DNA of 64,000 bases from Caecitellus pseudoparvulus. Taxonomy: Eukaryota; Protista; Bigyra: Bicosoecida. Under the pieces are notes generated by a model that saw nothing but the letters and a program-made list of their open reading frames with translations, searched no databases and was not told where the DNA came from. The stretch's first letter is position 1, and each line of letters opens with the position of its first letter. Positions 6,098 to 31,088 of this stretch are shown here, in pieces. Both the position numbers and the translations under genes were made by a program. The stretch covers positions 372,001-436,000 of the forward strand of contig CBFFRQ010000080.1 of the NCBI GenBank assembly GCA_965644315.1, in the 5' to 3' direction.

Positions 6098-8761
6098 ATG
6101 GCAGGCGTCTTTCAAGGTTTTTTTTCGAGCTCTTCGGCAGAGAGGGGTGGTGAGGCATCGGAGACCGAACAACACAGTACACACGACCAAGAGCCGCGAG
6201 CGAGACAGGCGTTTGAGGATGTCTTCGTGCAGGAGCGCTGGATCAAGGGCACGAGGGGGAGGTGAGGCCAATTTCCGCACCGCAGCCGCTTCCCGTCGGC
6301 ACCAGGCCGCGCCGCTGACGGCCCAGGTACAAAGTGGGCAAGACAATTGGAGAGGGAGCATATGGAAAAGTGATCAAGTGTCATCGGGCGTCTGATGCGA
6401 GGCCAGTTGCGATGAAGGTTGTCCGAAGGTGCGTGGGGGTGTGCCGAAGCCACCGCTCTTCGCTATGGGCCCGAACTGGACGCTGGGCCGTGCATTTTGC
6501 GCAGTGATCCGGCTTACTTTGCTGCTGGCACAGTGGAGGCGCAAGTTCTCCGGCAGTTGGCCGCCCCCGGGTCCGGGGAAGGGAATGGCATCCCCTCTAG
6601 CATCGTGCAGCTGCTGGACGTTTTTACGCTTCATGGTCACTTGTGCTTGGTCTTCGAGCTGCTGCAGGAGAGCTTGTTCGACATGCTGAAGCAGCGGCAG
6701 TTCCAAGGCATGCCACTAGACTACATCCGCAGCGTTGCTTCTGCGCTCATGACTTCTCTCGCGCACGTGCACGCTTGCTCGCTCGTGCACTGTGACGTGA
6801 AGCCAGAGAACATCATGCAAGGCAAGGGGGAAATCAAGCTCATCGACTTTGGGTCTGCAGCGACTCACGGACAGGTCACATCGGCTTATATCCAGTCTCG
6901 ATTCTATCGAGCTCCAGAGGTACTCATGGGCTGCGCCTACGGCGCTGCTGTGGACATGTGGAGTGCCGGGTGTGTCCTGGCCGAGTTGTGGCTGGGGCTG
7001 CCCCTCTTTGCAGGAGGCAATAACTGGGACCAAGTGCACCGCATTACGCAGCTTTTGGGGGTTCCGCCGTTTTGGATGGCGCAGAGCGGGGCGCAGAGTC
7101 ACGCCCTGTTTGAGGTGACCAAGGGCAGCAGGCGGCGCACGCTGCGCATGCCTGCTGACCACAGGGGCCACTGGCCGAGTTTTGCCGTTCGTCTGCGCTC
7201 CGAAAAGACGTGGAAAGCTGTGGCACAGGGGCCCGATCGTGACACGAGCCTCTGGCAGCAGAGCTTCCTGTCGAGCACAACTCTGTCCCGCCTCATCGCG
7301 CTGCACGCTGCTTGCGCGCCAGCCACGGAGCCAGAGGACAAGCACCGACTGATCCCGACAGGAAAGGTGCTGGAAGGCTTGCACAGAGACGACCCAGACA
7401 CGCCTGCACGCCTCTTTTTCACGGACTTCCTTGCCCGGCTGCTGTCGTTGGACCCTTGCAACCGACCGTCAGCCGAGCAGTGCTTGCAGCACCCATTTCT
7501 CACCATGGACACAGCCATGCTCCCCAGTGCTCTGGAGTCTGCAGGAAGCATGGGAATCGTTCTTCCACTGCCAGCCGCTGCACACCAAGAGCCTGCCGGG
7601 TCACAGGAGGCTTCCAATGCGGGGTCACCCGAAGCCTTGCCTGTGCTGCGTGACCTGTCCGGCAGCAGTTTGCCTGCGCGCATCCCCTCTGCTGGCTTGA
7701 GCAGAGACACAACGCTGCCACCTCAAACCCTGTTGCCTTGGACCCCGCCTGTAGACGAGTCATGGGATGTGCACAATGCCCAGTGCAAGGCTCAGTCCCT
7801 CACTGCAGCCCGCACTCGCAACCAGCAACGGGACATCACCCACACCCACGCAAACAGCACCGTGCGGGCCAGCGCCATGCCTCGCAGGGACAGCTTTGGC
7901 GCGGAGTCCACTGCTTCCCAGCTGAGTGCGCCCGGGTCACCAGTGGAGGTGCGCGGGCACAACTCACCCGTTCGGGGCCCGCTGCTGCTTCGCCCGCCAC
8001 CCCAGGCATCTCGCCCTGCGAAACTGGCCGCGCTGCAAACCATGGGGCATTCAGAGGGAAGCATTGTGCATCGGCGGCATAGCTCCGCTGGGTCTGTGGG
8101 GGACCTGCCTGATGTGCCGCAGGCTGCTGCCAGGTACGGCTTCCTACCCCTGGGCAGGCCGCGACCAGCACCTACCCCAGTTCAGCGAAGTCTGTCATGG
8201 AAAGATGCGGGCACTGCTGCAATGGCCACGGCTGGGGCGGGAAGCGGAGCAGGAGTGTCACCCGGGGCATCTCCATACTTCCACCACAGTCCTTCCTACG
8301 GCCCCATCCCGCCACCCATGGCGCCTTCCCTGCCTGCCCGCGCTCTGTCCATGTCCTGGGGTCCTGGCGTGCCCTCTCCTCCGAGGGCACGTAGGCGGAG
8401 TCACGGTGACATGCTGGCGGCTTTTTCTGCGCAGAGCATGCTGCAGTCGGCTCTGCACCTGTCCACGGGGCTGACTTCGCCGGCATCCACAGACGACGAT
8501 GCTTCCTCGTACGGCTTCCCATCGGGGGCAGCCACCCCAACAGTTCTGCACCCATCAGAGAGCCTGCAGGTTTCCCACCTGGGTGTTGACTTCCACAGGG
8601 TTCGCCCACCGGGTGAGGGCTGGGCTGCCCCAGCCAGCCCGTCTGAACACGGAGCCGCCCTACCGCGCAGGCTGGCGGCGCCGCCGACAGAGCTGCAACG
8701 CCGCCAGCGGCGGCGTAGCGCGCCCTTTGTGATGTTTGCACGACAAGGCAGCGCGAAGTAA
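6098..8761 (+). CDS. DYRK-family (YAK1-like) dual-specificity protein kinase with long disordered C-terminus
   Basis: YKVGKTIGEGAYGKV, VAMKVVRSDPAYF (introns 6262-6326 and 6429-6504), HLCLVFELL, HCDVKPENI, IDFGSA, YIQSRFYRAPE, DMWSAGC. Confidence 0.88.
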
Positions 8762-12905: not shown

Positions 12906-14271
12906 TCATGCTTGTCCAAGCCGCGCCTTTGTGGGCAAGGGCTCCTGCTGCATGGATGCTGCTGGCACTGGGGCAAGCACCGTACGAGCAGCAGACACAC
13001 GTGCTGCGAGGGACGCCTCCCGTGCCGCGACGTCACTCTCCCGTTTTGCAACAGCAGCCTCCCGTGCCTTTAGAGCCCGCATCTTGCTGCTGTAGCTCGC
13101 TGAGAGGTTGTACTCGCGCACAGCCAAGCTCGCCTCTCGAATGTGCAGACGCATGCCGGGCAAACGCTCAAGCTCCTCCACAGTTGGCCGAGCACTGCTC
13201 TCCAATTGCAAGCACCAGCGCACAGCCCTGTACAACTCATCTGAGTACTTCTCTGGCAAGCGTGGGAACTTCCCTGTGTTGATCTTCACTGCCAGCGCCA
13301 GCTGGTTTGCTGCATCAAAAGGCGGCGCGAGGGCTGCCATTTCGTAGATCAGGCAGCCCACAGCCCAAATGTCAGACTTCTCATTGTATCTGGTCTCGTT
13401 GATCATTTCCTGTGACCGGCAGGGGAAACGCCATTGCGTCAGTGCCCCGCCACGCTGATGAGCAGCACACTCACAGGAGACATGTAGAACGGTGTCCCAA
13501 CGTGTGTGTAGGCGTACTTGCTCTGGGAAGCAAGTTGCTTTGCGAGGCCGAAGTCCCCCACTTTCACTCTGCCCTTGCTGTCCAGCATGATGTTGCCGGG
13601 CTTGATGTCCCGGTGCAGCACCGGACACGTGACACCCTTGTCCTTCCTCCTGTGGCACTCCTTCAGGGCCAAAACCACCTGGGCAAAGCAACTCCAGATG
13701 AACTCTTCGTCCAGTTGAGTTCTGTGCCGCACGAAAAGCGTCAAGCAGTGCTCCACAAGCGACCACCCAGCACCACACCAAGGCACCTCACGAACCCTTC
13801 GCGTTGACACTTGCGGATGATGCGGCCGATGTCTCCACCCTCACAGAACTCCATGATGATGTTGATCGTTGTGCTGGCTTTGTCAACGATTCGGTCATAG
13901 TACCTTACAATGTATGGGTGCCGCATCTCGCGCAAGATGTTCACCTGTGCGGCACACCCGCCACACGTGCCTCGAGCACATCACAGCGTAAGCAGTTCGC
14001 CGAGCTCACCTCCGAGACAACTAACTGCTTCTCACGCTCACCCATGCTTCCATAGTTCATGGCCTTGCACACGAGAGTCTGCAGCCTCCGCAAGCGATGC
14101 ACTTCATGCACCCCTGGCACAGCCGTTACCACACGAAACGCCAGCGAAACTCACACGGCCGTCACTCTTGCGCTTCACCTTGGAAACAGTGCCAAAAGAA
14201 CCCTGCCCGATGACTCCAAGCACTTCATACTGCCCAAGGGCACTGCTTCCGATCCCGCTCTCTGCCGCCAT
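12906..14271 (-). CDS. NIMA-related kinase (NEK2-like) with C-terminal coiled coil, about 5 introns
   Basis: YEVLGVIGQGSFGTV, EKQLVVSE|VNILREMRHPYIVRYYDRI, MEFCEGGD, LHRDIKPGN, GDFGLAK, THVGTPFYMSP|E, YNEKSDIWAVGC. Confidence 0.92.
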
Positions 14272-14399
14272 GGCTGCAGCGGCAACCAGCAAGCTGAAGA
14301 GCGGCCCACCTGCAGCTCACAAACCCAAGCTCTGCGCAAACCAGGCCCAGGATGAAGCTGACAGTCTGCGCAGATCCAAGCTCAAATCACAAGGAAGCC

Positions 14400-17300
14400 T
14401 ACTGGTAGATTTACTTGCCTGAAGCCGAGAGCAGGACTGAGATTTGATGGGACTCAAGCAAGTGCGAAGCCAGCCACTATGGGCATCGGCGGCAACCATG
14501 TCAAGCGCACAACGCGGGGCACCGACACACTGCAACTGCTCACAGCAACAAAACGTGAGCATGCCCTTTTGAATACTAGTGCCGTTTCTTCAGTTGTCAG
14601 AATTCACGGCGAGAAGGGAGTCACACAGCGTGCATCTGACCGCACAAAGATACAATCGCAGAGATCAGCACCACGTACTCTAGTTCGCTGCATAAGTCAA
14701 CAACGCCGACCACAGAGCAAAGAACAACAAGAAATTCGAACTAAGCAAATAGGCGAGAAGTTCTTGACGAAGATCAAGACGATAGACCGATCACGAGTCA
14801 CACATTATCGAGTGCTCATCTTTCTCCCGCAAACAAGCTTTCTAGCACGTTGCCAAATGTGACAAGATCCTTCATCCTTGCAAGCGCTCTGATCCAGGCA
14901 CACCACACAGTATGCCTGACCAAGCACAGCTGCTCTCCTCATGAACAACTGCGCACATCGGAAAGATAGAGTGCTCTCTTCTGCTGGGGTGGGCAACACC
15001 TACCTGTCAAGCAGGACCACAGAACACCAACAGCTCAGCCAAACCCAAGCGAAAAGTGGGAACTGCAGATGCTGGGGGCACACAGCACATTCAATGCCCG
15101 CAGAGATCGCTGACCTGGACAAAGGCCGCAAATTGCACGAGCAGACAGATAATGCAGTGCGGCTGGTACTCGCTATGCATGTGACCGCGAAAACTCTTTA
15201 AATCTCTCAAGTCCTTGAAAGCTCAAGGTATGAGTATGCGCACATGAAGGTTTCAACAGTGATCTGTGAAGGGAAACCCACGAACTTTAGAAAGTTTGGG
15301 TTCGGCTGCCAAGTTCCACATGTTTCCCGAAGAAATCACCAAGGCAGGCATTCTCGGAATTGAGTCCCATTTTGGAGCTCTCTTGCGCAGAAGAACTCGT
15401 AAGTTTTGAGTTCTGTGATTGATCGCGTCTTGGGCATGTAACTTGAATCTCACACGGATTTCGTTTGTGGCTCTGAAGAGATTAGATACTTTCAAACAAA
15501 TGCATTGTGGTCATTGAAGCATGACATTTGTCCACGAGGCTCAAGGAATCCTCTCCTTTGAAACTCTCGTTATCCACACATAGAGTATGTCTACTGAAGA
15601 ACATCGCATGGGAACTATGGACAGAAATCTTTGTACACGAGCACTTGCACGTTACATGAGCTCGCGAGAAATATTCCTGTTCCGCCACCCTTAGAGGGTT
15701 GACTAGAATGAGACATTGGAGGTGCAAACGAATGGCGCAATGCTGCGCACTCATCGTATGGTGTTTCGTCCAAAGTTTGCTACAAAGATGATCTTTGTGC
15801 CAGTGTCCCAGACCAAAGCCATTCTATCGAATGAGGTTCGCAATTTGTCCCATGTGAATTACCAAAGCGATGAATATTCTTATGCTTGTTGCATTGGACC
15901 AAACAACTTGCGCTGTGTAGTCGAACAGGTTCGGTTTTGCTCCGAACGTTCAGTGTTCTGCAAGATCCTAGCTGTTTCCAATGTTCATGTTCGGATTTTT
16001 TCCATGAGAATGCACGAGAGGCTTACTTTGTGCATCTGCCCGAAGTATCGACAGAATTTTGATAAGTTTGTATTGTTGGGATAATGCTGCGACTCTTAGG
16101 GATTCAAGGATTCTGCGGGGATCAATGCATTGAGCTTTCATGTTCTGATCAAGTTGCTTGGATGCGTTGTACTATGAACTTGCCAATTACACCGATCAAG
16201 TGCCAAAGGTGAGTGTGTCGCAAGTGGAGTTTGCCTTGACAGTGTATGCAGATGCCTCGGAACAAGGCCATGTACTTTTTCGCAAAGGTCTGTGTGTGCA
16301 AAGCATCTGACATGTTGGTTACAATGCTGATCTGTAGGCAGAAGCTGAGTTTCTTGGATGAACACTTGATACCAGCAGGTACGAAGATAATGTCCGCATC
16401 CATGCAAGGTGCCAGTGCCGTCAATGTTGGTCAGCAGTGTTCCCTGACCTCTCGCTGATTGAGTAGTGTGACAGCAGCACGAGGTATTGAGTGTTGTGTT
16501 GCTGTTGTGTGGAAAATCAATGCTTGCTCTGCTTCTGGGTGGCGCTTCTGTGTCTTTTCGGTGGACAGGAGCATGCTCGTGCATGTCATTGGTTCCTAGT
16601 ATACTGCGTGTGTTGACATTTCTTTGGTTGTTTCTGCACAGCATGTCCTTCTTTCCACATTGGGATTGTGTCAGCGTTGAGTGCTAAGATGATTAAAGGC
16701 TGTGCATTCAGACTGGCGACCAAGAACTGAGTTTGGACGATGGTGAACCTACCAAACCAACACACTGGAAGTCTTTTCGCTATTGTCAAAGCGTTGTGAA
16801 ACGTTCTTTGTTCTATCACGTCTGGAGGATGTGGAGTTTGGTTTGCAGAGGTTTTCCAGCTCTGGCATGTGTTTTGCGATTGACTTCGCTTTCTCAGCTT
16901 GAAGAAGGATGGGAAATTGATATTGTTCATCGGTGAGCGGTTGTGATCTTCGAAGTCAAGTGGTGTTTGAGGCTTTCGTTTTGACTTCTGGTTCAACATC
17001 TCTGTCGTATTCTGTGTTCCTGACAGCTTAGTCCTCCGTCGTGCGCATGGGCATGGAGTGGCCCTGCTGGCATCGAAGGGAATCAATCTTGACGCCATTT
17101 GCGCTGTTTGAGCCCCGTCCAATAGGATTGCATCTTCTGTTGTGCTGGCAAGGCTGGCTTGTGACTTCGTGCGCAAGCGCAGGTCAGTCAATTCCCCAAA
17201 TCGTCTGCACATGCAACGTTGGGCAGCTGGCACACTCGGTGAGTGCGATCAAAGACCCATGTCATTGTGCCAGCTGTGCTCCGGCAGCGATCTGAGTGTG
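14400..17300. other. About 3-kb gene-free low-GC region between divergent genes (candidate centromere or replication origin)
   Basis: Sampled 60-nt lines at 15481, 15841, 16021 and 15901 are 38, 38, 40 and 48% GC, against about 60-75% elsewhere. No ORF has recognisable protein character. By far the largest intergenic gap in the window. Boundaries are gradual. Confidence 0.7.
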
Positions 17301-17376
17301 GTTCTTAGAGAGGCACGCTGTGAAGTTCGGCGCTCTCCAGTGACGTCGACGCAGTGCAGTGCGTGCTGCAGGAGGG

Positions 17377-20300
17377 ATGAGCATGAGTGGTGCCTGTGAG
17401 GAAGGCTTCTCAAGCACGCAGCGCAGGTTGGCACTGCTGCAGTGCATCTGTTGGTGTGAGGAGTGGAGAGATGCCGTGAGCTGCTTCTTGGCGGCAGCAA
17501 GGCCAGTGCAGGCTGGGAAGGCAATCGCCGGGTTGGCCGCCCGTGCTCAAGCCCAGCTTGCTTTGTGGGAGAGACTTGTGGTGTACAACTGGAGTTCAGG
17601 CGATGGTGATTTTCTCCAGCATTTGGTGGTGCAGCTGCTGGCAAGAGCGTCGTCGAGCGGGCTGCAGCAGGTTGCGGAGATTGGGTATGAGTTTGCTGGG
17701 AGTGGTGGTGCAGCGGGCCACTCTGACGCCTCGGAAGGGATGTTGATGGCGCTGCGGGCTGTAGATGCAGCTGAGCAGAATGGCCTTGCTTTGACTGCAC
17801 ACTCTTGCTTTGGCTCTGCCCTGTCCCATCGTGCAGCGGTTCTGGAAGCTCTTGGCGTGGCAGAAAGGTAAGTTCACGCTGTCGCAGCGACTGTGGCCTT
17901 TGCCAATCACAGCCACGCTGTTCGCAGGCTGCACGGGGCATGGTCAGAGAAGGTGTCCAGAGAAGTCCCTACTTCGATGGCAGTGCGAGTGGGAGCGATT
18001 CACAGGTCTGTCATGAAGTTCTCGGGGGAATTAAGCTCGGGCGGCGGTGTCGGAGGCAATGCTGCAGCCGTTGGCGAAGCTGTTGCAGCTGTCGTTGGGC
18101 AAGGAACGTCAGCTTTCCAGCTGATGGACTGGATTGGTGCCATACTGCACACCCTTGACGATGCCGGGGCGCTTGGTGCGCCAGTGGCGCGAGTTCCCGG
18201 GCCTGCCATCGTGCGTAGTCTGGACACCGCCCTGCGTGAGGTGGACGTGGTGCTGTGGGAGCGGCTGCACAGCTACAAGGCTGGGCCCGAGGCATGGATT
18301 GGGGCTGCTGCGTCGACGTTGTGTCTCTCTGGGCCAGGGACATCAAGGCGGAGCGTGGCGTGGGTCTTAAGCTCAGTGCTTGCATTGGGTTGGGTGGGGC
18401 TCTTGGCGGTCATGCTTGGCAGGTGTCTCTGCCTGCGGGAGGAGCTGCTCAAGGCAACATCGACAAGAGCGTGCATGCGACTTGCAGGTGGGCTGGAGGG
18501 CCCGGGGCTGGACAGCGATGCAGCGACGGCAGCGTTGGCCAGAGCAGGCGTCTCTGTCGCCTGGCTCGGCAGTGTGATCGTGACTGCGATCGGCGACGGC
18601 GAGTCCGAGCAGCGCCAGGCGCGGGTAGATGCTGCCTTGATGGGTCGTGCGAGGGCTACTCAGCTAGTTGAGGCATATGGAAGCGAGGTTCGGGGTGCTG
18701 CTTCTGCTGATGTGGATCGCCCAGACTCGGACAAGCTTGTGGAGTGGCAGAGTTCTGACAGTGATGATGGCGCTTCAAGCTTGCCACCACCACAAGAAGA
18801 GCCACCTAGTGATGCTCATGATGCTGATGTGCGGGCTATCGCACCGTCTACGGCAGAGGTGCGAGGGGGCGACGGGGTGAACCGGACAAACCCTGCAGCA
18901 GCAGCTGCTGGTTCCATGAATCACCTGGCGCAGCAAACCTCCCCGGCTCCGTCGGGTGGGCAGCCGTCAGTCCTGCACATTCAATCTCAGCAAGGGCACG
19001 TGGAAGAAGGCTCAGCGGCATTTTTGTTCCATGCAGGGGACGGTTCTCATGAACGAGTGCTGCCAGATGCGGTGCTGCATGCCTTGCGTGTTGCTGAGCA
19101 CGAGCAGTCACGCTCATTATTCCAGGAGGAAGCAGTCGACGAGTCTCCAGAAGGAGAGGAGTCTGATGATGACGATGACAGCACTGCCACACTGAGCTCG
19201 GCGTCGTCAGGAGAACCTGTCGCATCTCGCTTTGCTCCGCAGACTCCGCCGCTGTCGCCCTCTCGCTCCCCCTCACCCCATGAGGATGCGCGTTTGACGT
19301 ACATGGAGCCTCTGCCGCGCAGTCGTGCGGACAGTGTTCTCCCCCTGCCTCTCATGCGGCGGAACAACCTCTCTCCCCTGCCTGTACCTGCGGAGGAAGG
19401 CCAGTCAGCTGTCGAGAGCGGCGAGAGACAAGTCGAGGCCGCAAAGCAGCGCTTGCCCTCGTCGGGCGAGGACACAAGTCAGGCCGAATCACGTGCTCTT
19501 TCCTCACAGGTCTCCGAGACCTTGGCTTTCCTTATGGGGGGTGGGGGGTTGCTGTCTGCGGCGGAAGGTGGCCACAGTGCATGGGAGGACGATGCGTTGG
19601 ATGCCATTGCATCGCGGCTGCGCCCCACTCCGAAGCCTGAAGCAGCCCCTAGCCCACCGCCACCTCCGGCCTCTCCATCGTCCGATTCCAGTGCAGGTGC
19701 CGACGAGGACCATGAGCTGGAACAGCAAGGGCACGAGGGTGGAGCATCTGACGCGGACAGCGACGGTTGCAGCCCGCCACAGTGGTCGCCTGCCTCTGGG
19801 TCACCCCACCGCGCTTTCGTGGGCCACACTGAGTCATCGGCACGCGACGCAGAGGAACGTGTGTTCCACGAAGGCGACTTTGCTGCGTTGCACGCGCGCA
19901 GCCAGCGCAGAGCGGCTGTTCGGGATGGCCGTATTGGGGCAGGTGACGCTCCAGATGAAGCTTCCTTCTTCGTTCAAGCTGAAGGGGACTCACCCCACTC
20001 CACCGGCCCCACAGCTCTGCTGCCAGCTGACGTGGAGCACCTGGACTCTGACGTAGGTGCGGCTGCCCCGGAGGCTTCCCTGCGGGAATCGCTGCTGGGC
20101 TTGCTTGCGCAGCTGCAGCAAGGCGGACGGCCTGGAGTGACTGCCAGCCCCCCGAGGGTGAGAGGGACGCTGTTTGGGGCAAGCCAGCCCACCGCAGGCC
20201 TTTCCGCATCAGAGCACGCTGGGGCGCCTGTGAGCTCGCCGGGGGAGGCGCAAGACTCCGTTGCCATCAGGGCCCTGCCACAACGCGCCCCTGCGCCTTC

Positions 20301-23928: not shown

Positions 23929-26218
23929 ATGAAGGTGGTGGGCTTGTTGTCGGGCGGGAAGGACAGCGTGTATGCCTTGGTCCAGGCAGCGGCGCTGGGG
24001 CATGAGGTGGTTGCTGTGGCCAACTTGCGCCCTGTTGAAGACAGCGTGCAGGAGCTGGACAGCCACATGATCCAGACTGTTGGACATAATGCCGTCGTTG
24101 GCATCGCGCAGTGCCTCAACTTGCCCTTGTTCGTGCGGCGGACTGCAGGCAAAGCTGTCTCCGGGTCCTTGCACTACACCGCGTCGGCAGGTGATGAGAC
24201 GGAGGATCTTGCCATGTTGCTGGAAGCAGTTAAACTGAAGTTTTCCGACCTGGGTGGTGTCGTGTCGGGCGCCATTCGCAGCAACTACCAGCGCCTCCGA
24301 GTGGAGGCAGTTTGCCAGCGCCTGGGGCTTCAGTCTCACGCGTGGTTGTGGGAGAGGCGAGAAGAGCGGCTGCTTCATGATATGTGCCGTGACGGCATCA
24401 GGGCTATTTTGCTTAAGATTTCTACAATTGGCCTGAAGCGACAGCATGTCGGCTGCTTTCTGCATGACACGGTAGCCCACTTGCAAGACCTGGTGCGGAT
24501 TTCGGCTCATTTTCCGCAAACACTGCTCTGCTGCTTCACCTGCGATGGCTCCCTTGCAGAACGAAAAATACGAAGTAAATGTGTGCGGGGAAGGCGGAGA
24601 GTTTGAAACGCTGACTCTGGATGCGCCGCTTTTTTCATCTTCTCTACGGGTCACAAAAGAGGTGCTCCACTGCCAGCAGGATGACCCCATCTCCCCTGTG
24701 TACAACTTGGAGGTGGTCGCGTGGGAGGCAGCTCCCAAGGAGTTGACGGCTTGGGAGAGGGGCCTTCAGCAGCATCTGCCTGGCCCAGGCTTCGAGCTCG
24801 TTGAAGCAACTGGTGAGTCTGGAACTCCAGATCAGGCAGGAACCCTGGCTGCTGCGCATGGCCAAGGTTCGGGTGGTGACACGACCGCCCATGCGAACGT
24901 GCACATCGTCAAGGAGGGGACGATGACGTTTGTACGAGCGATTCCGGAAGCGTCGGCTCAGCCACAGTCAGGTGTCCACCAGCTGCGAAGCTGCTTGCAG
25001 GCTTTGGAAGCCGCCCTGCAAGGGGACGGCAGCAGCTTGGCTGATGCCTGCTTTGTGCACATTTTCCTCGCAGACATGGGGAGCTTCGGGGAGATGAACC
25101 GCGAGTACTGCCTTCACTTTCCGGACCAACACCCCCCTTCCAGGTCGTGCGTGGAAGTGGAGCTTCCCTCCCACATGCAGGTGTGCCTCGCAGCGCATGT
25201 GGTGCCTGGCAGTCACTCTGCTGCACTTGCTGGAGACACCGTTTGTAGGACTACCCTGCATGTACGCAGTCTGTCCCAGTGGGCCCCCGTGTGCATTGGC
25301 CCGTACTGTCAAGCCAACGTCACCGGCGGGTACATTCAAGTCGCTGGCCAAATCGCGCTGGTTCCCTCCAACATGGAGCTGTTGGCCGGAGGTCTTGAGG
25401 CGCAAACCCGCTTGGCAGCCTGCAATGCTCGGCGTGTCTTGGTCACGTTGCGGTCCGACTGGCCCATGTGCACCAGCATCTTGGTGTTCGTCAGCTCTGC
25501 CGCCGTGGAGCAGGCAGGGCAGGGCCGCCAAGAAGTCATGTCTGCTGCTCGGGGGTACTTGCTGGATGCGATGCAGAAGGCCATCACTGGCCAGGTCACC
25601 ACTGCCTTGGAGGGCGAAACGGACGCTTGTTCCGGTGCGCCAGTTTCAATGGCGGCAGCTTCAGACGCGGCTGTCAGTGAGGATGCCAGCGCATGGCGCG
25701 AGCTTGCAGAGGAGCCCGTCTTCGACAGCGACTGTTCCGCTTGGACTTTGAGCCGCGGGGCAATTTCTGCCAAGGACGCAGTTTCTGCCGTTTCATCTGT
25801 GCCACTATCGATTGTGCTTGTGCCAAGCCTGCCGCGCGGGGCGTTGATTGAGCTGGAGGTGTGTGCAGCTTCTGCGAGCGCCGCAGCGGAGGAGCCAGCC
25901 TCAGACTGTGCTGGCCAGCGACGCCCCAGCTCTGCCCTCAGTGGGATTGTTGACCATTCTGATGAATGTGGCCGAACTTGCTTCGTGTCTTCATGCGGCA
26001 GGCGTGAGCGACATGTGTGGGTCACTCGCGCAGATGAAGCCGCCGCCGGCTCCGCTGCCGTGTGCAGTGGCCTCGTACGCCGCTTCGTCACGGACGGCGA
26101 TGGTGACAAGGAATCACTTAGTACAGATGCTAGCAGTGTTCTATGCATTCCTGTGTTGGCTGCCCAAGCCCCAGATGGGACCCCTGCTAGTTGCCTGATG
26201 GTGGCTTCCTCATGTTGA
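23929..26218 (+). CDS. DPH6: Diphthine--ammonia ligase with C-terminal RidA/YjgF domains
   Basis: MKVVGLLSGGKDS, ELDSHMIQTVG, DETEDL, GAIRSNYQRLRVE, CGEGGEFETLTLD, PPSRSCV, LHVRSLSQWAPVCIGPYCQA, LPRGALIE. Intron 24493-24559. Confidence 0.93.
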
Positions 26219-26235
26219 GGCCTGAATCGCGCGCA

Positions 26236-26993
26236 TCAGCCCCTGGAGCGCTTCTTTGCATCTTCAAGAAAGAGGCAGTGTTGAATGACCTCCTCCAGCT
26301 CGCACCGCGCAGGGCGTCTCTCTGTGATAGGGGCCGGGGGTGCCGGTGGGGGTTGCGGGGCCACTCCTGCCTGGAGCTGAACCTTACTTTGTGCCATAGG
26401 AGTCCAGTGGCGTTTTCTCACATTGGTAAAGTAGTTCCTCACTTGCGTCTCCGTCAGACCTGTGCAGGAACGTGCGGATGATGCTCCTTGCCCAGCAGAC
26501 TGCTTGCCAGTCAGCGCGCGTGGCCTACCTGCTGCTTCTGCCAGCGCCCGCTTCTCGGCTTGGCTCGGGTATGGGTTGGGGATGTGGTCAAGGAACCAAT
26601 GCAACAGGATGTCAGTCGATTCGGAGGGCAGGTTGCCTGAACGCATGTGCACCGCGCCTGCATGAAGCAGCGCCTTGAAGTCTGCAACGGTCGCCGAGGT
26701 CGAGCTTCCCGCGACTGCTGCCCCTGAGGTGAGGCCCCCCACAGCAACCTGGCTGAGAGCGGGGAAGCTCGAAGGGGGAGCTCCGTGCAAGGAGTCCTGA
26801 TGTGGCACACATGTCCATCTGAGCTCAGCCCGAGCCTGCCGCACCGCCTCCCTGGCAGGTGCGAGCAAGCGGGCGATGGATACGTCTATCCCGGTGCCTG
26901 TGCCTGTATTCAGTCGTCGTCTAGGGCATGGAGCCATGGCGTGCCTTTGGGCAAGCACTGGGTAAGCTCCTCACCTGCCTCGCGGCGGCTCAT
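26236..26993 (-). CDS. TALE-class homeodomain transcription factor (about 205 aa, 3 exons)
   Basis: HD reads RSGNLPSESTDILLHWFLDHIPNPYPSQAEKRALAEAAG|LTETQVRNYFTNVRKRHW after removing the 69-nt intron 26460-26528. First exon MSRREAG and intron 26904-26974 are inferred. Confidence 0.85.
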
Positions 26994-27007
26994 TGTCGAG
27001 AGTCACA

Positions 27008-27017
27008 CAATTTCCGC
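27008..27017 (+). promoter_or_regulatory. CAATTTCCGC motif in the bidirectional spacer of the homeobox pair (recurrent 5'-proximal motif)
   Basis: The exact 10-mer also occurs at 6269-6278, 11420-11429 (minus), 31497-31506, 33653-33662 and 38284-38293. Confidence 0.45.
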
Positions 27018-27130
27018 AACCTTGCACGTGCACGATGAACCTCGCCGCCCGAGCAACAGCGTCGCTTTGCCGCATCTCTGCATCTATTCTTTGATTTCTT
27101 TGTTTTTGCTTGGCTTCCACTTCTCGTGGC

Positions 27131-27694
27131 ATGGCCGGCAGCTCCGCTGGGCACCTGCCACACACCTGCGCTGCCTTGAATGCCCTGAGCTGTTTCGGGA
27201 GGGAGCACCACAAGCCAGAGGGTGCTCCGATGGGCAGCTCAGACTTTTTTGCAGCGAGCGCCTGTGTCATTCAGCGGGCAGCACCTGGTCACGATGCACA
27301 GGCTGCCAGCTTGCTGGTTGAAGCTGCCCGAGCGTGGGCGCTTGCGAGTTGGAAGGCTGAGCTGGCCTCAACCCAGGCGCCTCTGGCCCAGGCAGCAGCA
27401 GCCCCGAAGCCGCTGCCAGGCACACAAAGTTCACTGAGGATCGCGACCAAGCGGCGCAGTGCCCTCACATCAGAGTCCAAGACAGTGCTCGAAGAGTGGC
27501 TTGCCCAGCACGTACGCCTGCCGTACCCGACAGAGGAGGAGAAGGCGGTGCTTGCAGCGGAGGCAGGCATTCGCAAGGAACAGGTGACGAATTGGTTCAT
27601 TAACGCAAGGGGCAGGAACACTTGGAAGGATTTGGTGAAGAAGCAAGGCTTGGAGACGTTCCGAGATGAGAGGGGTCGCTGGCACGCTGTGTGA
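27131..27694 (+). CDS. TALE-class homeodomain transcription factor (about 187 aa)
   Basis: HD KRRSALTSESKTVLEEWLAQHVRLPYPTEEEKAVLAAEAGIRKEQVTNWFINARGR has the PYP loop and WFIN helix 3. An alternative in-frame ATG lies near 27230. Confidence 0.9.
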   Translation: MAGSSAGHLPHTCAALNALSCFGREHHKPEGAPMGSSDFFAASACVIQRAAPGHDAQAASLLVEAARAWALASWKAELASTQAPLAQAAAAPKPLPGTQSSLRIATKRRSALTSESKTVLEEWLAQHVRLPYPTEEEKAVLAAEAGIRKEQVTNWFINARGRNTWKDLVKKQGLETFRDERGRWHAV

Positions 27695-27710
27695 CAATGC
27701 ACGGTGGTGC

Positions 27711-30700
27711 CTACATGCAATGCATCACCTGCACAGTGGCTGCCCCCCCCTCTGGCTCCAAAACCAACGGGGAGATCCGGACACAGGAGAACTGCCCCGG
27801 GAACAAGACCCCATCCACTGTGATGTCTAGCAAGCCAGCTGCTCGCGTGGTGCTGCCTGCGATGCTGTTGGGGCAGAGGGTGACGTGGTTCACCACGGTG
27901 CAGTCGGCATGTCTGTCGTGTAGGTCCTGCAACTCCTCTCCGAATCGGGGTGGTGCTGAAGAGTCGCGTGATGCTGAGCGCACTCGCTGTGTCAGCCAGC
28001 TGGAGACAGGGCTGGCATCAGGGAGGCTGGACATGCTCAGCCACGGAGCTGACGGGTCTTGGCACGAGCCGTCCTCTGCAGCCCACACCGCGCCCCCCGC
28101 TACCTCCCGCAACTCATCACCGCCATGGCCCAGCGCCGACTCACAGTGTGCGGTGGGGCCCTGCTCCCGTTCATCACCCGTGGCAATCCCACCCACCTCT
28201 GCCTGGACCGTCGCGGCCCGGGCTGCTCGGGCGGCTAGGTGCCGGACTCGGGGACAGTTGTCCAGGCGGAGGCTGGCGTAGCGCTGGGCTGGCATCTGCA
28301 AGACGGCTGCCTGCCCCCCACCACTGGAAGCCTCCGTGCTGCGCACGCACGCTTGCACACACAGATCAGGCGTCGTCAACGACTGGCCAGTCTGGACAAG
28401 CTGCTTCAATGCTCCCCAGTGGCTGCCCCCTGTGCGCGACTGAGCTTTGGACACAGCGGTCGCCATGCCCAGCTCAACGTAGCAGGTCATGGGAACGATC
28501 ATGTTTGCCGGGCGCCGTGGAGGTGCCAGTGGATCAGACCTGTACCACTTGCCGCTTTGCACGACGCCCTGCGGGGGCTCGTGGAGGCCTGAACCTCTCT
28601 CCTTCTCCGCCACGACACGCCCTCCATCCGGCAGCCCCACCTCGGTGTCAGCGAGCCAGCACTCCACCTGCCACAGGACGACAGGCACACGTGCGCTAGC
28701 ACTGCGAATGTAGGCTTGGAGCAGCTCAGCATGCAGGTGCAGTGGTCCCGTGCTATGCGCAGGGCTGTGCTGGAGGGGAGCGACAGCTGCCAAGCCTGGC
28801 GGTACGCAAGGCATGACACCACAGTCACCCCTGAAAGGCCCATACACGAACCTGCGATACCATGGGTCATTGAAGGCGATGTACTCGGCCAAGGTGCACA
28901 CGGCCTGGGGCTGAGCAGAGGGCATGATGTACACTCGCGTGTCCAGAACCGCGAAGGTGGCAGGCGCCTTGGCCATTGCAGATGCAAGTGCAGCAAAGAC
29001 AACTTGCACCGCCGCATCATCGCCAGCCGCCGCCAAGTGCAAAGTGGGCCTGCAAGCAACGCTAGCCAACTCAGCAGGCTGCAGACCCGTCGCGCTATCG
29101 ACTGTGGCGAAGTGCGAAGGCACAGCAGCAGCTTGGCGTGCCGCAGCAAGAATGCGCTCTTCTTCAGCATGCAGACAAACCAAGTGGCTGGAGCCAAGCA
29201 AGTACGGCCATGGGCTTTCAGGGGGGGAGGCATGCAGGGGGTCGAAAGCAGCAGCGGCAGCCTGCAGTTGCTTCTGCGTTGCATCCTCAGGGTTACTGCC
29301 CTGTGCCTTGGCCCCAGGCGGCGCCCAGAGCTGGGAATGAGCCAGCCCATCCCTGGCCTTGTCAATGCTCGTGAATAGCAGCAACATGTCGGGGATGCCC
29401 ATCCATGAAGGAATACGAAGCTGCCCGGCTCCGCATGCGTCAGGGCGCGGCCCTGACTCGGTTCCAGCGGCTGGCGGTTCACCCCCCGAAGGCTGCAGTC
29501 GAAACCACTCGCTTGAGCACAGGGTAGGTGGGTCTTCGTCCCCACTCGTGCCCATAATGTCGGCGAAGAGGCTGTTCATGAGCACCAGGCGCGCTGTGTG
29601 CTCGTCCAACGCCAGCTGCAACGGGACGGAGGAGGTTCCCAGTGGAAGGGAAGCCGCCGAATTAGCGTACGCCCCACGGCCGAGAGTGGCAAGGTGCTCC
29701 TCATCACTGCACATGCTGTCCGTGTCACTGGCGTCACTGCCCGTGCTTGACTGCGCGGGGTGCACCCCCGCCAGAGTGCCGCCGTGAACAACGCCCAAGG
29801 CTCGCACAGCGTCAAAGCTGCCTGGCGACATGCTGAGGCAAGCTGCAAGCGAAACTGCACACCACTTGGCAAGATTTCCAGGGGATGCAGACTCCAGGGT
29901 CAGCGAGAGGACCCCCGCTGGTGCGTCTGTGTGCAGGGAGAAGGCTGTGAGGATGACGGCCCTTCGCAGGGCAAGGTCCCAGGACAGGCAGGAAGGCACG
30001 CCCTTCGCCCCAGCGCTCATGACTTGCTGCAATTGGAGCCATCCATGGTCTGAGTTGTCAAAGAACAAGAGAGTGCTGCGCTGGCTGTCACTCCACGCTG
30101 CAGTGGCCTCTTCCTCCTCAGCTGGCACTGAGAGGGCCAAGCTTGGGAACTCCCGCAGTAACGCCCGCAAGGCAGCACTGCCCGGTGACAGCTGCTCAGT
30201 AGCCAGAGCAGCGACAAGTGATTGGGCCATGTGGCAGAGGGGCGGAGGTGTGCCAGCCACCAAGGCTACAAGAGGGGGTGTGCACTCGCTGAGGAATGCA
30301 GCATCGGGCACAGGGTGAGCCTCCAGCACCTGCTGCCAAGCATGCAGCCCAAATGCCAACGAAGAGCTACTGAATGCAGGGTGGGGGTCTCTGTAGGCTG
30401 GAGCGTGCAGCACAATGCCGCAGAGGGCGTCGTACAGCGTCTCCAGGTGATGCCCAGCCGCTGCGCTGGACAGGGTGTACGGGAGGGCGAAGGGCACACT
30501 GCCAGAGGACCGCACCGTCTCTTGAAGGTGGTGATCCAGACTAGGTGCTGCGACCACCAGCTGGTTGTCGCAGGCAGAGAGCAGGGTGTACAGCAAGCAC
30601 AGCTGCACGACATCTTCCTCTTGCAACGACACCCTGCGATGCAGCAGCGCAGCCGCCATGGACTCATTTGCGACCCGGCCGAAGCCCCCCTCGGCATCCA

Positions 30701-31088
30701 GGCGTTGCAGCCATCTCTTGATGGTGTGCTGCAAGCTAGTCGTCGCTTTAAGTGGCACTGTCAGCGCAATGTAGATGATGGTACGAACGAGAGCAGCAGC
30801 TTGCTCGGGGGTGCGGATTTCGCTGGCCCACCAATCCAGACACGCCTCGATGAAAACACTGGCGTGCTCTGGGACGACCAGCTGCTTGTGCCACCTGGGG
30901 GGCGATGTGAAGTTTCCTTTCTTGTGCATGGCAATTGCGGGTGTCGTCGCTGCAAGCACTCACAGGCTTGCATGTTGCTGCATGGAGATGCCACTTGGCG
31001 AAGCGGCGTCTGACAGCAGTTGCTTGAACTTCTCCGCGCGCTGCTGAGTCTCATGGATGCCAAGGGTCTTGGCTGCCTTGTCCGACAT
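27711..31088 (-). CDS. Large protein with PI3K class IB regulatory subunit (p101/PIK3R5-like) C-terminal motifs
   Basis: LAAAGDD..V, VYIMP, LAEYIAFNDPWYRRFV, ELLQAYIRSASARVPVVLWQVE and CYVELG are collinear with p101 motifs as recalled (VVFGSDR, FFYVP, YLGMLDPWYERNV, YCRFAARPVLLQVYQTE, SLELG). First exon MSDKAAKTLG..., intron 30895-30963. Confidence 0.55.

What the first reader, a model, noticed from the sequence alone, without database searches (positions are those of the whole stretch)
26236..27694. Head-to-head pair of dissimilar TALE homeobox genes: candidate mating-type or life-cycle switch locus in a protist
Seen: two small (about 190-205 aa) homeodomain genes transcribed divergently, with start codons only 137 bp apart. 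Both have the TALE PYP loop but different recognition helices (WFINARGR with I50, versus YFTNVRKRHW with T50 and the usual W48 replaced by Y). They show no visible similarity outside the HD and differ in intron content, so this is not a recent duplication. Each has an N-terminal amphipathic helix (IDVSIARLLAPAREAVRQARAEL; AASLLVEAARAWALASWKAEL). Known: basidiomycete mating-type loci are divergent HD1/HD2 pairs, and TALE heterodimers control the haploid-diploid transition in Chlamydomonas (GSP1/GSM1) and Ectocarpus (ORO/SAM). Inference: a co-regulated heterodimer pair, possibly a sex-compatibility or zygote-programme locus in a lineage with cryptic sex. Unlike the fungal case, both partners are TALE class.
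Basis: partly seen in the sequence, partly recalled or inferred. Interest (0 to 1): 0.85.

Follow-up and report, generated by a model that had tools for sequence, protein, structure and literature searches.

The report
Conserved head-to-head TALE homeobox pair
A marine heterotrophic stramenopile carries two different TALE homeobox genes back to back on a short shared promoter, an arrangement kept in at least eight lineages, which points to a partnered transcription-factor switch rather than a variable mating-type locus.

Summary
Gene A (27131-27694, +, 187 aa, no intron) and gene B (26937-26236, -, three exons, about 188 aa) are both TALE homeobox genes. Their start codons are 193 bp apart, not 137.

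They belong to two old, distinct TALE lineages. A has I50 and WFINARGR. B has T50 and the RKRHW motif, plus a conserved fourth helix. B-class proteins also occur in Pythium, Hondaea and MAST-4.

The same head-to-head A/B pair turned up in all eight lineages where the contig reached far enough, in at least three different flanking contexts. No contrary case was found. This supports a selected, co-regulated pair that probably forms a heterodimer.

The basidiomycete-style mating-type reading is not supported:
- Six within-species haplotypes of B differ at only 2-6 residues, none in the homeodomain.
- SNP density matches the flanks.
- Both genes are under purifying selection.
- The variants look recombined.

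Expression, dimerisation and a life-cycle role remain untested. An intact HAP2 gene shows that sex is plausible in this organism. No paper describing such a pair was found.

The parts
27131..27694 (+). Gene A: intronless TALE homeobox gene, 187 aa plus stop. Class A: I50, WFINARGR.
   Evidence: ORF. Pfam Homeobox_KN E 3e-17. Full-length orthologues.
27293..27388 (+). Gene A long N-terminal helix (residues 55-86) with a conserved K/S-W-x-A/Q-E/Q-L motif. Candidate partner-binding region.
   Evidence: AlphaFold2 model helix H55-86, pLDDT 65-71. The motif is conserved in L014, L016, L018, L103 and L108.
27449..27616 (+). Gene A homeodomain (residues 107-162) with the PYP three-residue loop.
   Evidence: Pfam PF00046 residues 107-162 and PF05920 residues 123-162. 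pLDDT 89-94. Foldseek matches TGIF1, Exd and MEIS1.
27617..27691 (+). Gene A conserved C-terminal tail after the homeodomain (WKD..QGL..RD....W.A). Predicted as a short helix plus hairpin.
   Evidence: Conserved in L014, L016, L018, L103 and L108. pLDDT 83-87.
26938..27130 (.). 193-bp spacer between the two start codons. Presumed shared bidirectional promoter.
   Evidence: Sequence. Spacers in orthologous pairs are about 200-330 bp. No motif shared across clades was found.
26529..26937 (-). Gene B exon 1: N-terminal region plus homeodomain helices 1-2 (LLHWFLDH..NPYP).
   Evidence: Pfam Homeobox_KN on the exon alone, E 2e-6. Alignment with orthologues.
26460..26528 (-). Gene B intron 1: 69 nt, GT-AG, in frame and free of stops. 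Sits at homeodomain position 39, phase 1.
   Evidence: Exactly a 23-residue gap against intronless L012 B. Splice sites read. Orthologues have an intron at or near this place.
26388..26459 (-). Gene B exon 2: recognition helix NYFTNVRKRHWTP (Y48, T50).
   Evidence: Class-B signature shared by 35 representative proteins.
26322..26387 (-). Gene B intron 2: 66 nt, GT-AG. Holds a polymorphic stop (26367 C>A makes TGA in haplotypes L009 and L010).
   Evidence: L014 and L016 lack this stretch and run straight into the conserved motif.
26236..26321 (-). Gene B exon 3: conserved post-homeodomain motif (RRPARCELEEVI) and the stop codon. Equivalent to the class-wide fourth helix GR.PRS.LD..L.
   Evidence: Conserved with L014 and L016 and with P0148 and others. 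Modelled as helix H238-249 at pLDDT 95-98 in orthologue P0190.

Best explanation
This is an ancient two-gene cassette. Two different TALE-class homeodomain transcription factors are transcribed in opposite directions from a spacer of about 200 bp.

Gene B belongs to a stramenopile-wide TALE class. It has T/A50, an RKRHW recognition helix and a conserved fourth helix. Among solved structures its homeodomain is closest to MEIS/PKNOX, and in the tree it is closest to a KNOX-like row.

Gene A belongs to a second class. It has I/S50 and the NAR(G/A)R helix, with its own conserved N-terminal helix and C-terminal tail.

Shown here:
- Both genes are real, intact and under purifying selection.
- Each has orthologues.
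- The head-to-head linkage is kept in eight lineages while the neighbouring genes change.

Inferred:
- The shared spacer is a bidirectional promoter that switches both genes on together.
- The two proteins form a heterodimer, as other TALE pairs do (MEIS-PBX, KNOX-BELL, ORO-SAM). The contact would run through the homeodomains with their conserved flanking helices or tails.
- The dimer drives a developmental or life-cycle programme, such as a zygote, cyst or zoospore stage, in an organism that keeps the gamete fusogen HAP2.

Because alleles are nearly uniform, the pair would work as a self-compatible unit controlled by when it is expressed. It would not act as a self versus non-self compatibility lock.
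For: Pfam: TALE homeobox in both genes.

Orthologous A/B pairs, head to head:
- L012/L013
- L014/L015/L017
- L016
- L099/L100
- L103
- L106
- L108
- the window species and its haplotypes

The four other class-B contigs end less than 400 bp upstream of B and cannot be judged, so there is no contrary case.

Flanks: DPH6 and the p101-like gene in the window clade, other genes in L012/L099, and none of these in L103.

Homeodomain tree: all 10 B rows form one clade (96/89, starred). The A rows group at 94/97, but that group also holds P0267 and a window-genome paralogue (L002).

Purifying selection: pN/pS is 0.065 for A and 0.23-0.43 for B.

Conserved regions beside both homeodomains, modelled with high confidence.

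By profile search against solved structures, B scores best on PKNOX1/MEIS. A scores about equally on PKNOX1, TGIF1 and PBX/Exd, and above MEIS.

ORO and SAM dimerise through their homeodomains (PMC6368402). TALE dyads are ancient (PMC6219170).

HAP2 is intact in this genome.

Two of 8 TALE genes adjacent by chance: about 0.002.
Against: - No interaction was tested; the structure tool folds single chains only.
- No transcript evidence exists. Contigs from the four runs filed or guessed as RNA (only X20 is on record as RNA) cover both flanking genes but nothing between 26252 and 27614. That is compatible with silence, and contigs cannot prove absence.
- No sequence motif is shared by the spacers across clades.
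- No MEINOX, PBC or POX dimerisation domain is detectable in either protein.
- In a compact genome, a 200-bp head-to-head spacer is a small target that is costly to break. Part of the conserved linkage may therefore be structural rather than functional.
- The organisms behind L012, L099, L103 and L106 were not identified.
Confidence: 0.58

Rival explanations
1. A basidiomycete-like mating-type locus. Many alleles with variable N-termini exist, and only A and B proteins from different alleles can dimerise, so the dimer reports that two compatible cells have fused.
For: The divergent homeodomain pair has the same layout as fungal HD1/HD2 loci. All amino-acid polymorphism in B lies in the N-terminal half. 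HAP2 is present.
Against: Six B haplotypes and three A haplotypes from separate samples differ at 1-6 residues only. SNP density is 15 and 9 per kb in the pair against 3-19 per kb in the flanks. pN/pS is below 0.5. Variant combinations pass the four-gamete test, so recombination is not suppressed. The assembly has a single copy. The nearest divergent B sequence (P0137) sits beside an equally divergent A and has no DNA match to the window, so it comes from another species and is not an allele.
Confidence: 0.06
2. A two-allele or sex-linked system in which only one mating type has been sampled. Alternatively, the pair is not itself the mating-type locus, but its two genes are expressed in opposite gamete types, as GSP1 and GSM1 are in Chlamydomonas.
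For: TALE partners kept apart in gametes are the known logic in green algae (PMC6368402). The pair has no coverage in the four runs filed or guessed as RNA, while the flanks are covered. HAP2 is present.
Against: A shared 193-bp spacer makes separate gamete-specific control harder, though not impossible. Six haplotypes all of one type would occur with probability about 1/32 under equal frequencies. No second locus version is in the assembly.
Confidence: 0.14
3. Two independent transcription factors that do not bind each other. They stay adjacent only because a short bidirectional promoter in a compact genome is hard to split.
For: The genome is very compact, with 16-17 bp between convergent stop codons on both sides of the pair. 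No known dimerisation domain was found. No shared spacer motif was found.
Against: Linkage survives in every informative lineage while both neighbours change, and through a local four-gene inversion. Both partners keep class-specific conserved segments next to the homeodomain, which is where TALE partners touch in solved complexes. One database protein (P0267) appears to carry an A-like homeodomain followed by the start of a B-like one in a single reading frame.
Confidence: 0.2

Closest known systems
Basidiomycete HD mating-type loci (HD1/HD2, e.g. Ustilago bE/bW, Coprinopsis A locus)
   Same: Two dissimilar homeodomain genes are transcribed divergently from a short shared spacer. One partner is of TALE type. 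N-terminal regions vary more than the homeodomains.
   Different: Here both partners are TALE class. Alleles are nearly uniform and recombining. The organism is a stramenopile. No Mating_N, Mating_C or Ustilago_mating domain passes any threshold; these appear only as weak Atlas feature leads.
OUROBOROS/SAMSARA of Ectocarpus (PMC6368402)
   Same: Both are stramenopile TALE pairs. ORO and SAM dimerise through their homeodomains and lack MEINOX and PBC domains, as here.
   Different: ORO and SAM are reported as two separate loci, and that paper does not mention adjacency. Its authors found no orthologues beyond brown algae and one raphidophyte.
KNOX/BELL and GSM1/GSP1 of the green lineage; MEIS/PBX of animals (PMC6219170)
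   Same: These are dyads of two TALE classes. The B recognition helix RKRHW(K/T)P resembles KNOX WFINQRKRHWKP. The B profile scores best on PKNOX1 and MEIS. B has a fourth helix after the homeodomain, as PBX/Exd do.
   Different: B has T50 where KNOX and MEIS have I50. No KNOX1/2, ELK, Meis_PKNOX_N, PBC or POX domain was found. The genes are physically linked head to head.
Class-B TALE proteins of other stramenopiles (Pythium oligandrum TMW60181.1, Hondaea fermentalgiana GBG30955.1 annotated 'CUP9', a MAST-4 protein)
   Same: They share the homeodomain signature (T/A50, RKRHW) and the post-homeodomain PR(S/C).L(D/E)..(I/L) helix.

Membership tests
TALE superclass homeobox | Homeodomain with a three-residue insertion (P-Y-P) between helices 1 and 2 | tested here: met
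   PF05920 is above its cut-off in A (62.6 bits) and B (49.1 bits). The PYP loop was read in both. Folds match MEIS, Exd and TGIF.
KNOX/MEIS (MEINOX) class, for gene B | MEINOX (KNOX1/KNOX2 or Meis_PKNOX_N) domain N-terminal to the homeodomain | tested here: not met
   The only trace is KNOX1 at E 0.5 (10.6 bits, cut-off 26) in the L012 orthologue. Nothing was found in the window protein or seven other class-B proteins at E up to 10.
KNOX/MEIS (MEINOX) class, for gene B | Homeodomain groups with KNOX/MEIS homeodomains | tested here: inconclusive
   The B clade is next to a KNOX-like protein with 83/78 support, on 66 columns only. PKNOX1 and MEIS are the best solved matches, 7-8 bits above PBX. 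Residue 50 is T, not I.
PBC or BELL class, for gene A | PBC (PF03792) or POX (PF07526) domain N-terminal to the homeodomain | tested here: not met
   No hit at E up to 10 in A of the window, L012, L014, L016, L103 or L108. The profile scores PBX/Exd about 5 bits above MEIS, which is weak.
Basidiomycete-type HD mating-type locus | Divergently transcribed pair of dissimilar homeodomain genes | tested here: met
Basidiomycete-type HD mating-type locus | One TALE-type (HD1) and one typical 60-residue (HD2) homeodomain | tested here: not met
   Both are TALE.
Basidiomycete-type HD mating-type locus | Many alleles with hypervariable N-termini; diversity far above the flanks | tested here: not met
   Six B and three A haplotypes differ at no more than 6 residues. 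SNP density equals the flanks. pN/pS is 0.065 for A and 0.23-0.43 for B. The sample is small and comes from metagenomes.
Basidiomycete-type HD mating-type locus | Dimer forms only between products of different alleles | not testable with these tools
   This needs a binding assay or a multimer prediction.
ORO/SAM life-cycle regulators | ORO- or SAM-specific conserved domains outside the homeodomain; shared intron positions | not tested
PMC6368402 reports none outside brown algae and one raphidophyte.
GSP1/GSM1-type gamete-split dyad | The two partners are expressed in opposite gametes and meet in the zygote | not testable with these tools
   Only assembled contigs of RNA runs were available, and none covers the pair.

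The most novel reading that the evidence does not exclude
The head-to-head A/B cassette is the ancestral stramenopile TALE dyad. If so, it is also present next to the class-B genes of oomycetes, labyrinthulomycetes and MAST groups, and it is the master switch of their sexual or resting-stage programme. Its layout, an inverted tandem pair on one promoter, could preserve how the first heterodimerising TALE pair arose from a single proto-TALE. It would also be a non-fungal counterpart of the fungal HD locus that works without allelic self-recognition.
Probability: 0.2. Interest if true: 0.85.

Novelty: new variant of a known kind. Interest (0 to 1): 0.68.

Why it matters
TALE dimers control the haploid-diploid switch in green algae, land plants and brown algae. 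Homeodomain pairs define mating type in mushrooms and smuts. Sex and life-cycle control are almost unknown in heterotrophic stramenopiles (MAST groups, labyrinthulomycetes, relatives of oomycetes).

A small, conserved, physically linked TALE pair gives a concrete candidate that can be tested in tractable relatives such as Hondaea or Aurantiochytrium, and in oomycetes. It defines a stramenopile-wide TALE class with its own signature. It also bears on how TALE dyads originated. And it shows that a divergent homeodomain gene pair need not be a polymorphic compatibility locus.

Tried and rejected
- RNA evidence: four runs filed or guessed as RNA (only X20 on record as RNA) were laid on 24500-29500. 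Contigs cover the flanks only, with no joints, so they confirm neither introns nor expression.
- Spacer motifs: an exact k-mer search across five spacers found only two trivial 6-mers. TGACAG occurs in L014 and L016 but not in the others, so it was dropped.
- The JGI metagenome scan with the A profile returned mostly animal PBX transcripts. Only L017 and L018 were relevant.
- The word-based search with L012 B was swamped by low-complexity words and returned two proteins.
- The Atlas feature search gave generic TALE clusters only.
- Foldseek found nothing for the N-terminal helices of either model.
- Searches for the accession numbers in papers found nothing.
- P0137 was considered as a deeply divergent allele and rejected: its A neighbour is equally divergent and there is no DNA match to the window.
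- The upstream ATG at 26993 was rejected as the start of B because it is out of frame.
- Spliced model of B: no joined B protein was given to any search or fold tool. Exon pieces, stop-free read-through by reference, and intronless orthologues (L012 B, P0190) were used instead. One script walked the three exons in order only to check the frame and count synonymous and non-synonymous differences, and printed the last 45 residues.

Full report
**What is there**

The window is part of a 30.6-Mb, roughly 61% GC eukaryotic assembly. Two ORFs carry the TALE homeobox domain.
- Gene A (27131-27694, +): PF05920 E 3e-17.
- Gene B (- strand, ending at 26236): PF05920 E 5e-13, with the match split in two.
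- BLASTP between them aligns only the homeodomain, at 28% identity.
- The genome has 8 TALE hits, and no other two are close together. The pair is single copy. Two of eight within about 1.1 kb of 30.6 Mb has a chance probability near 0.002.

**Gene models**

- A needs no intron. Its first 33 residues align with orthologues, so ATG 27131 is preferred over the internal ATG used by metagenome gene callers.
- B starts at ATG 26937 and has two short GT-AG introns.
- Intron 1 (26528-26460, 69 nt) lies in the homeodomain. It corresponds exactly to a 23-residue gap against an intronless orthologue.
- Intron 2 (26387-26322, 66 nt), when removed, brings the motif RRPARCELEEVI into frame. L014 and L016 have that motif directly after the homeodomain. 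Two other haplotypes carry a TGA inside this intron.
- B is therefore about 188 aa.
- The start codons are 193 bp apart.
- Both introns happen to be in frame and free of stops in this haplotype.
- I gave no joined B protein to any search or fold tool. Exon pieces, stop-free read-through by reference, and intronless orthologues stood in for it. One script walked the exons only to check the frame and count substitutions.

**Organism**

- The best named relatives of the neighbouring CDKAL1 gene are Hondaea fermentalgiana (58%) and Pythium species (56-57%). Unnamed relatives reach 81-83%.
- No light-harvesting protein or RuBisCO was found.
- The DNA occurs in marine metagenomes.
- HAP2 is intact at 367 bits with no stops, so sex is plausible.

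**The pair is conserved**

The same arrangement was found in eight lineages: a class-A gene and a class-B gene head to head, with start codons roughly 200-330 bp apart.
- The window species and its haplotypes L009-L011.
- L014/L015/L017.
- L016, in GCA_024449685.1.
- L108.
- L012/L013.
- L099/L100.
- L103.
- L106.

Four further class-B contigs end less than 400 bp upstream of B and say nothing either way. There is no contrary case.

Flanks differ between groups:
- The window, L014 and L016 share DPH6, the p101-like gene and CDKAL1. The four-gene block DPH6-B-A-p101 is inverted between the window species and the other two.
- L012 and L099 have quite different neighbours.
- L103 has neither set.

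**Two old classes**

- In a homeodomain tree, all ten B rows form one starred clade (96/89). The A rows group at 94/97, but that group also holds P0267 and the window-genome paralogue L002. The pair therefore predates the split of these lineages.
- Class B has T or A at position 50, the helix N.RKRHW.P, and a following motif (G)R.PR(S/C).L(D/E)..(I/L). In P0190 this motif is modelled as a fourth helix at pLDDT 95-98.
- Thirty-five of 149 representative hits carry the class-B signature. They include proteins of Pythium oligandrum, Hondaea fermentalgiana and MAST-4.
- Class A has WF(I/S)NAR(G/A)R, an N-terminal helix with a K-W-x-A-E-L motif, and a tail G(L/Y)..(x)RD....(W/M).A modelled at pLDDT 83-87.
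- Neither class has a detectable MEINOX, PBC or POX domain.
- Against solved structures, B scores best on PKNOX1 and MEIS. A scores about equally on PKNOX1, TGIF1 and PBX/Exd, and above MEIS. Folds match TALE homeodomains only.

**Is it a mating-type locus?**

- L009, L010 and L011 are 98.3-99.2% identical to the window.
- SNPs per kb are 15 and 9 across the pair, against 3-19 in the flanks.
- pN/pS values: A 0.065, B 0.23-0.43, p101-like 0.12, CDKAL1 0.064.
- Window plus five database variants give six B haplotypes. They differ at 2-6 coding residues, all in the N-terminal half, plus up to two differences in intron-coded positions. Three A haplotypes differ at 1-2 residues.
- Positions 26 and 87 show all four combinations, a sign of recombination. 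Metagenome assemblies can create chimeras, so this is tentative.
- Between species, A and B diverge about as much as the DPH6 and p101-like neighbours.
- Together this argues against a multiallelic self-recognition locus. It does not exclude an unsampled second allele class.

**Expression**

Contigs from four runs filed or guessed as RNA (only X20 is on record as RNA) cover both flanking genes. None covers 26252-27614, apart from one contig that reaches the last 80 bases of A. Contigs cannot show absence, so expression is unknown.

**Mechanism proposed**

A bidirectional promoter turns on both genes. The products form a heterodimer through their homeodomains and the conserved adjacent segments. 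This is how ORO and SAM bind (PMC6368402) and how the MAT alpha2 tail binds a1. The dimer then drives a stage-specific programme. All of these steps are inferred.

**Literature**

Seven searches of the held library found no report of a head-to-head TALE pair in stramenopiles. Joo et al. 2018 did not sample stramenopiles.

**Verdict**

- The co-regulated heterodimer pair reading is supported by conserved linkage.
- The mating-type reading is not supported.
- The life-cycle role remains open.

Noticed in passing
window 24545-30959 versus L014:2930-9566 and L016:2851-9537: The four-gene block DPH6 / B / A / p101-like is inverted, relative to the large orphan gene and CDKAL1, between the window species and two related species. 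Haplotype L009 of the window species is collinear with the window.
   Followed up: partly
window 26460-26528; L014 about 7150-7225; L016; L108: The homeodomain intron of gene B sits at position 39 phase 1 in the window and L108, but at position 42 phase 1 in L014 and L016. That is a 9-nt shift in the same phase. L012, L099 and L103 have no intron there.
   Followed up: partly
window 26322-26387 and 26460-26528: Both B introns are multiples of three and free of stops in this haplotype, so a naive ORF reads straight through (240 aa). Haplotypes L009 and L010 have a TGA at 26367.
   Followed up: partly
protein P0267: One reading frame carries an A-like homeodomain (WFINARVREWKP; it groups with class A in the tree), followed about 70 residues later by the start of a B-like homeodomain (LLTAWFLEH..NPYP), and is cut off at its end. 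It may be an A-B fusion. Many other protist hits carry two or more TALE homeodomains.
   Followed up: no
proteins P0209, P0175, P0290: Class-B TALE proteins occur in Pythium oligandrum (TMW60181.1), Hondaea fermentalgiana (GBG30955.1, annotated CUP9) and MAST-4. An A50 sub-class (WFANMRKRHWKP ... KKPRCLLDMLL) includes the Pythium protein.
   Followed up: partly
window 24545-26218: The C-terminal ORF of the DPH6-like gene (two L-PSP matches) has pN/pS about 0.6 between haplotypes. This is far more relaxed than its neighbours. Part of it may not be coding as read.
   Followed up: no
window 14001-18000: GC falls to 0.50-0.52, against 0.58-0.66 in the 2-kb bins on either side, about 9 kb from the pair.
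   Followed up: no
G000:C81:462535-506238: A tandem rDNA array of at least five full small-subunit copies, spaced about 8.45 kb apart. The small-subunit gene is short, about 1697 nt. A second, weaker small-subunit match on C213 is probably organellar.
   Followed up: no
G000 loci L002-L007: The other six TALE genes of the genome are long (about 500-875 aa open frames). They have T50 (WFTNARKR) or R50 (WFRNERKR) recognition helices. None is paired.
   Followed up: partly
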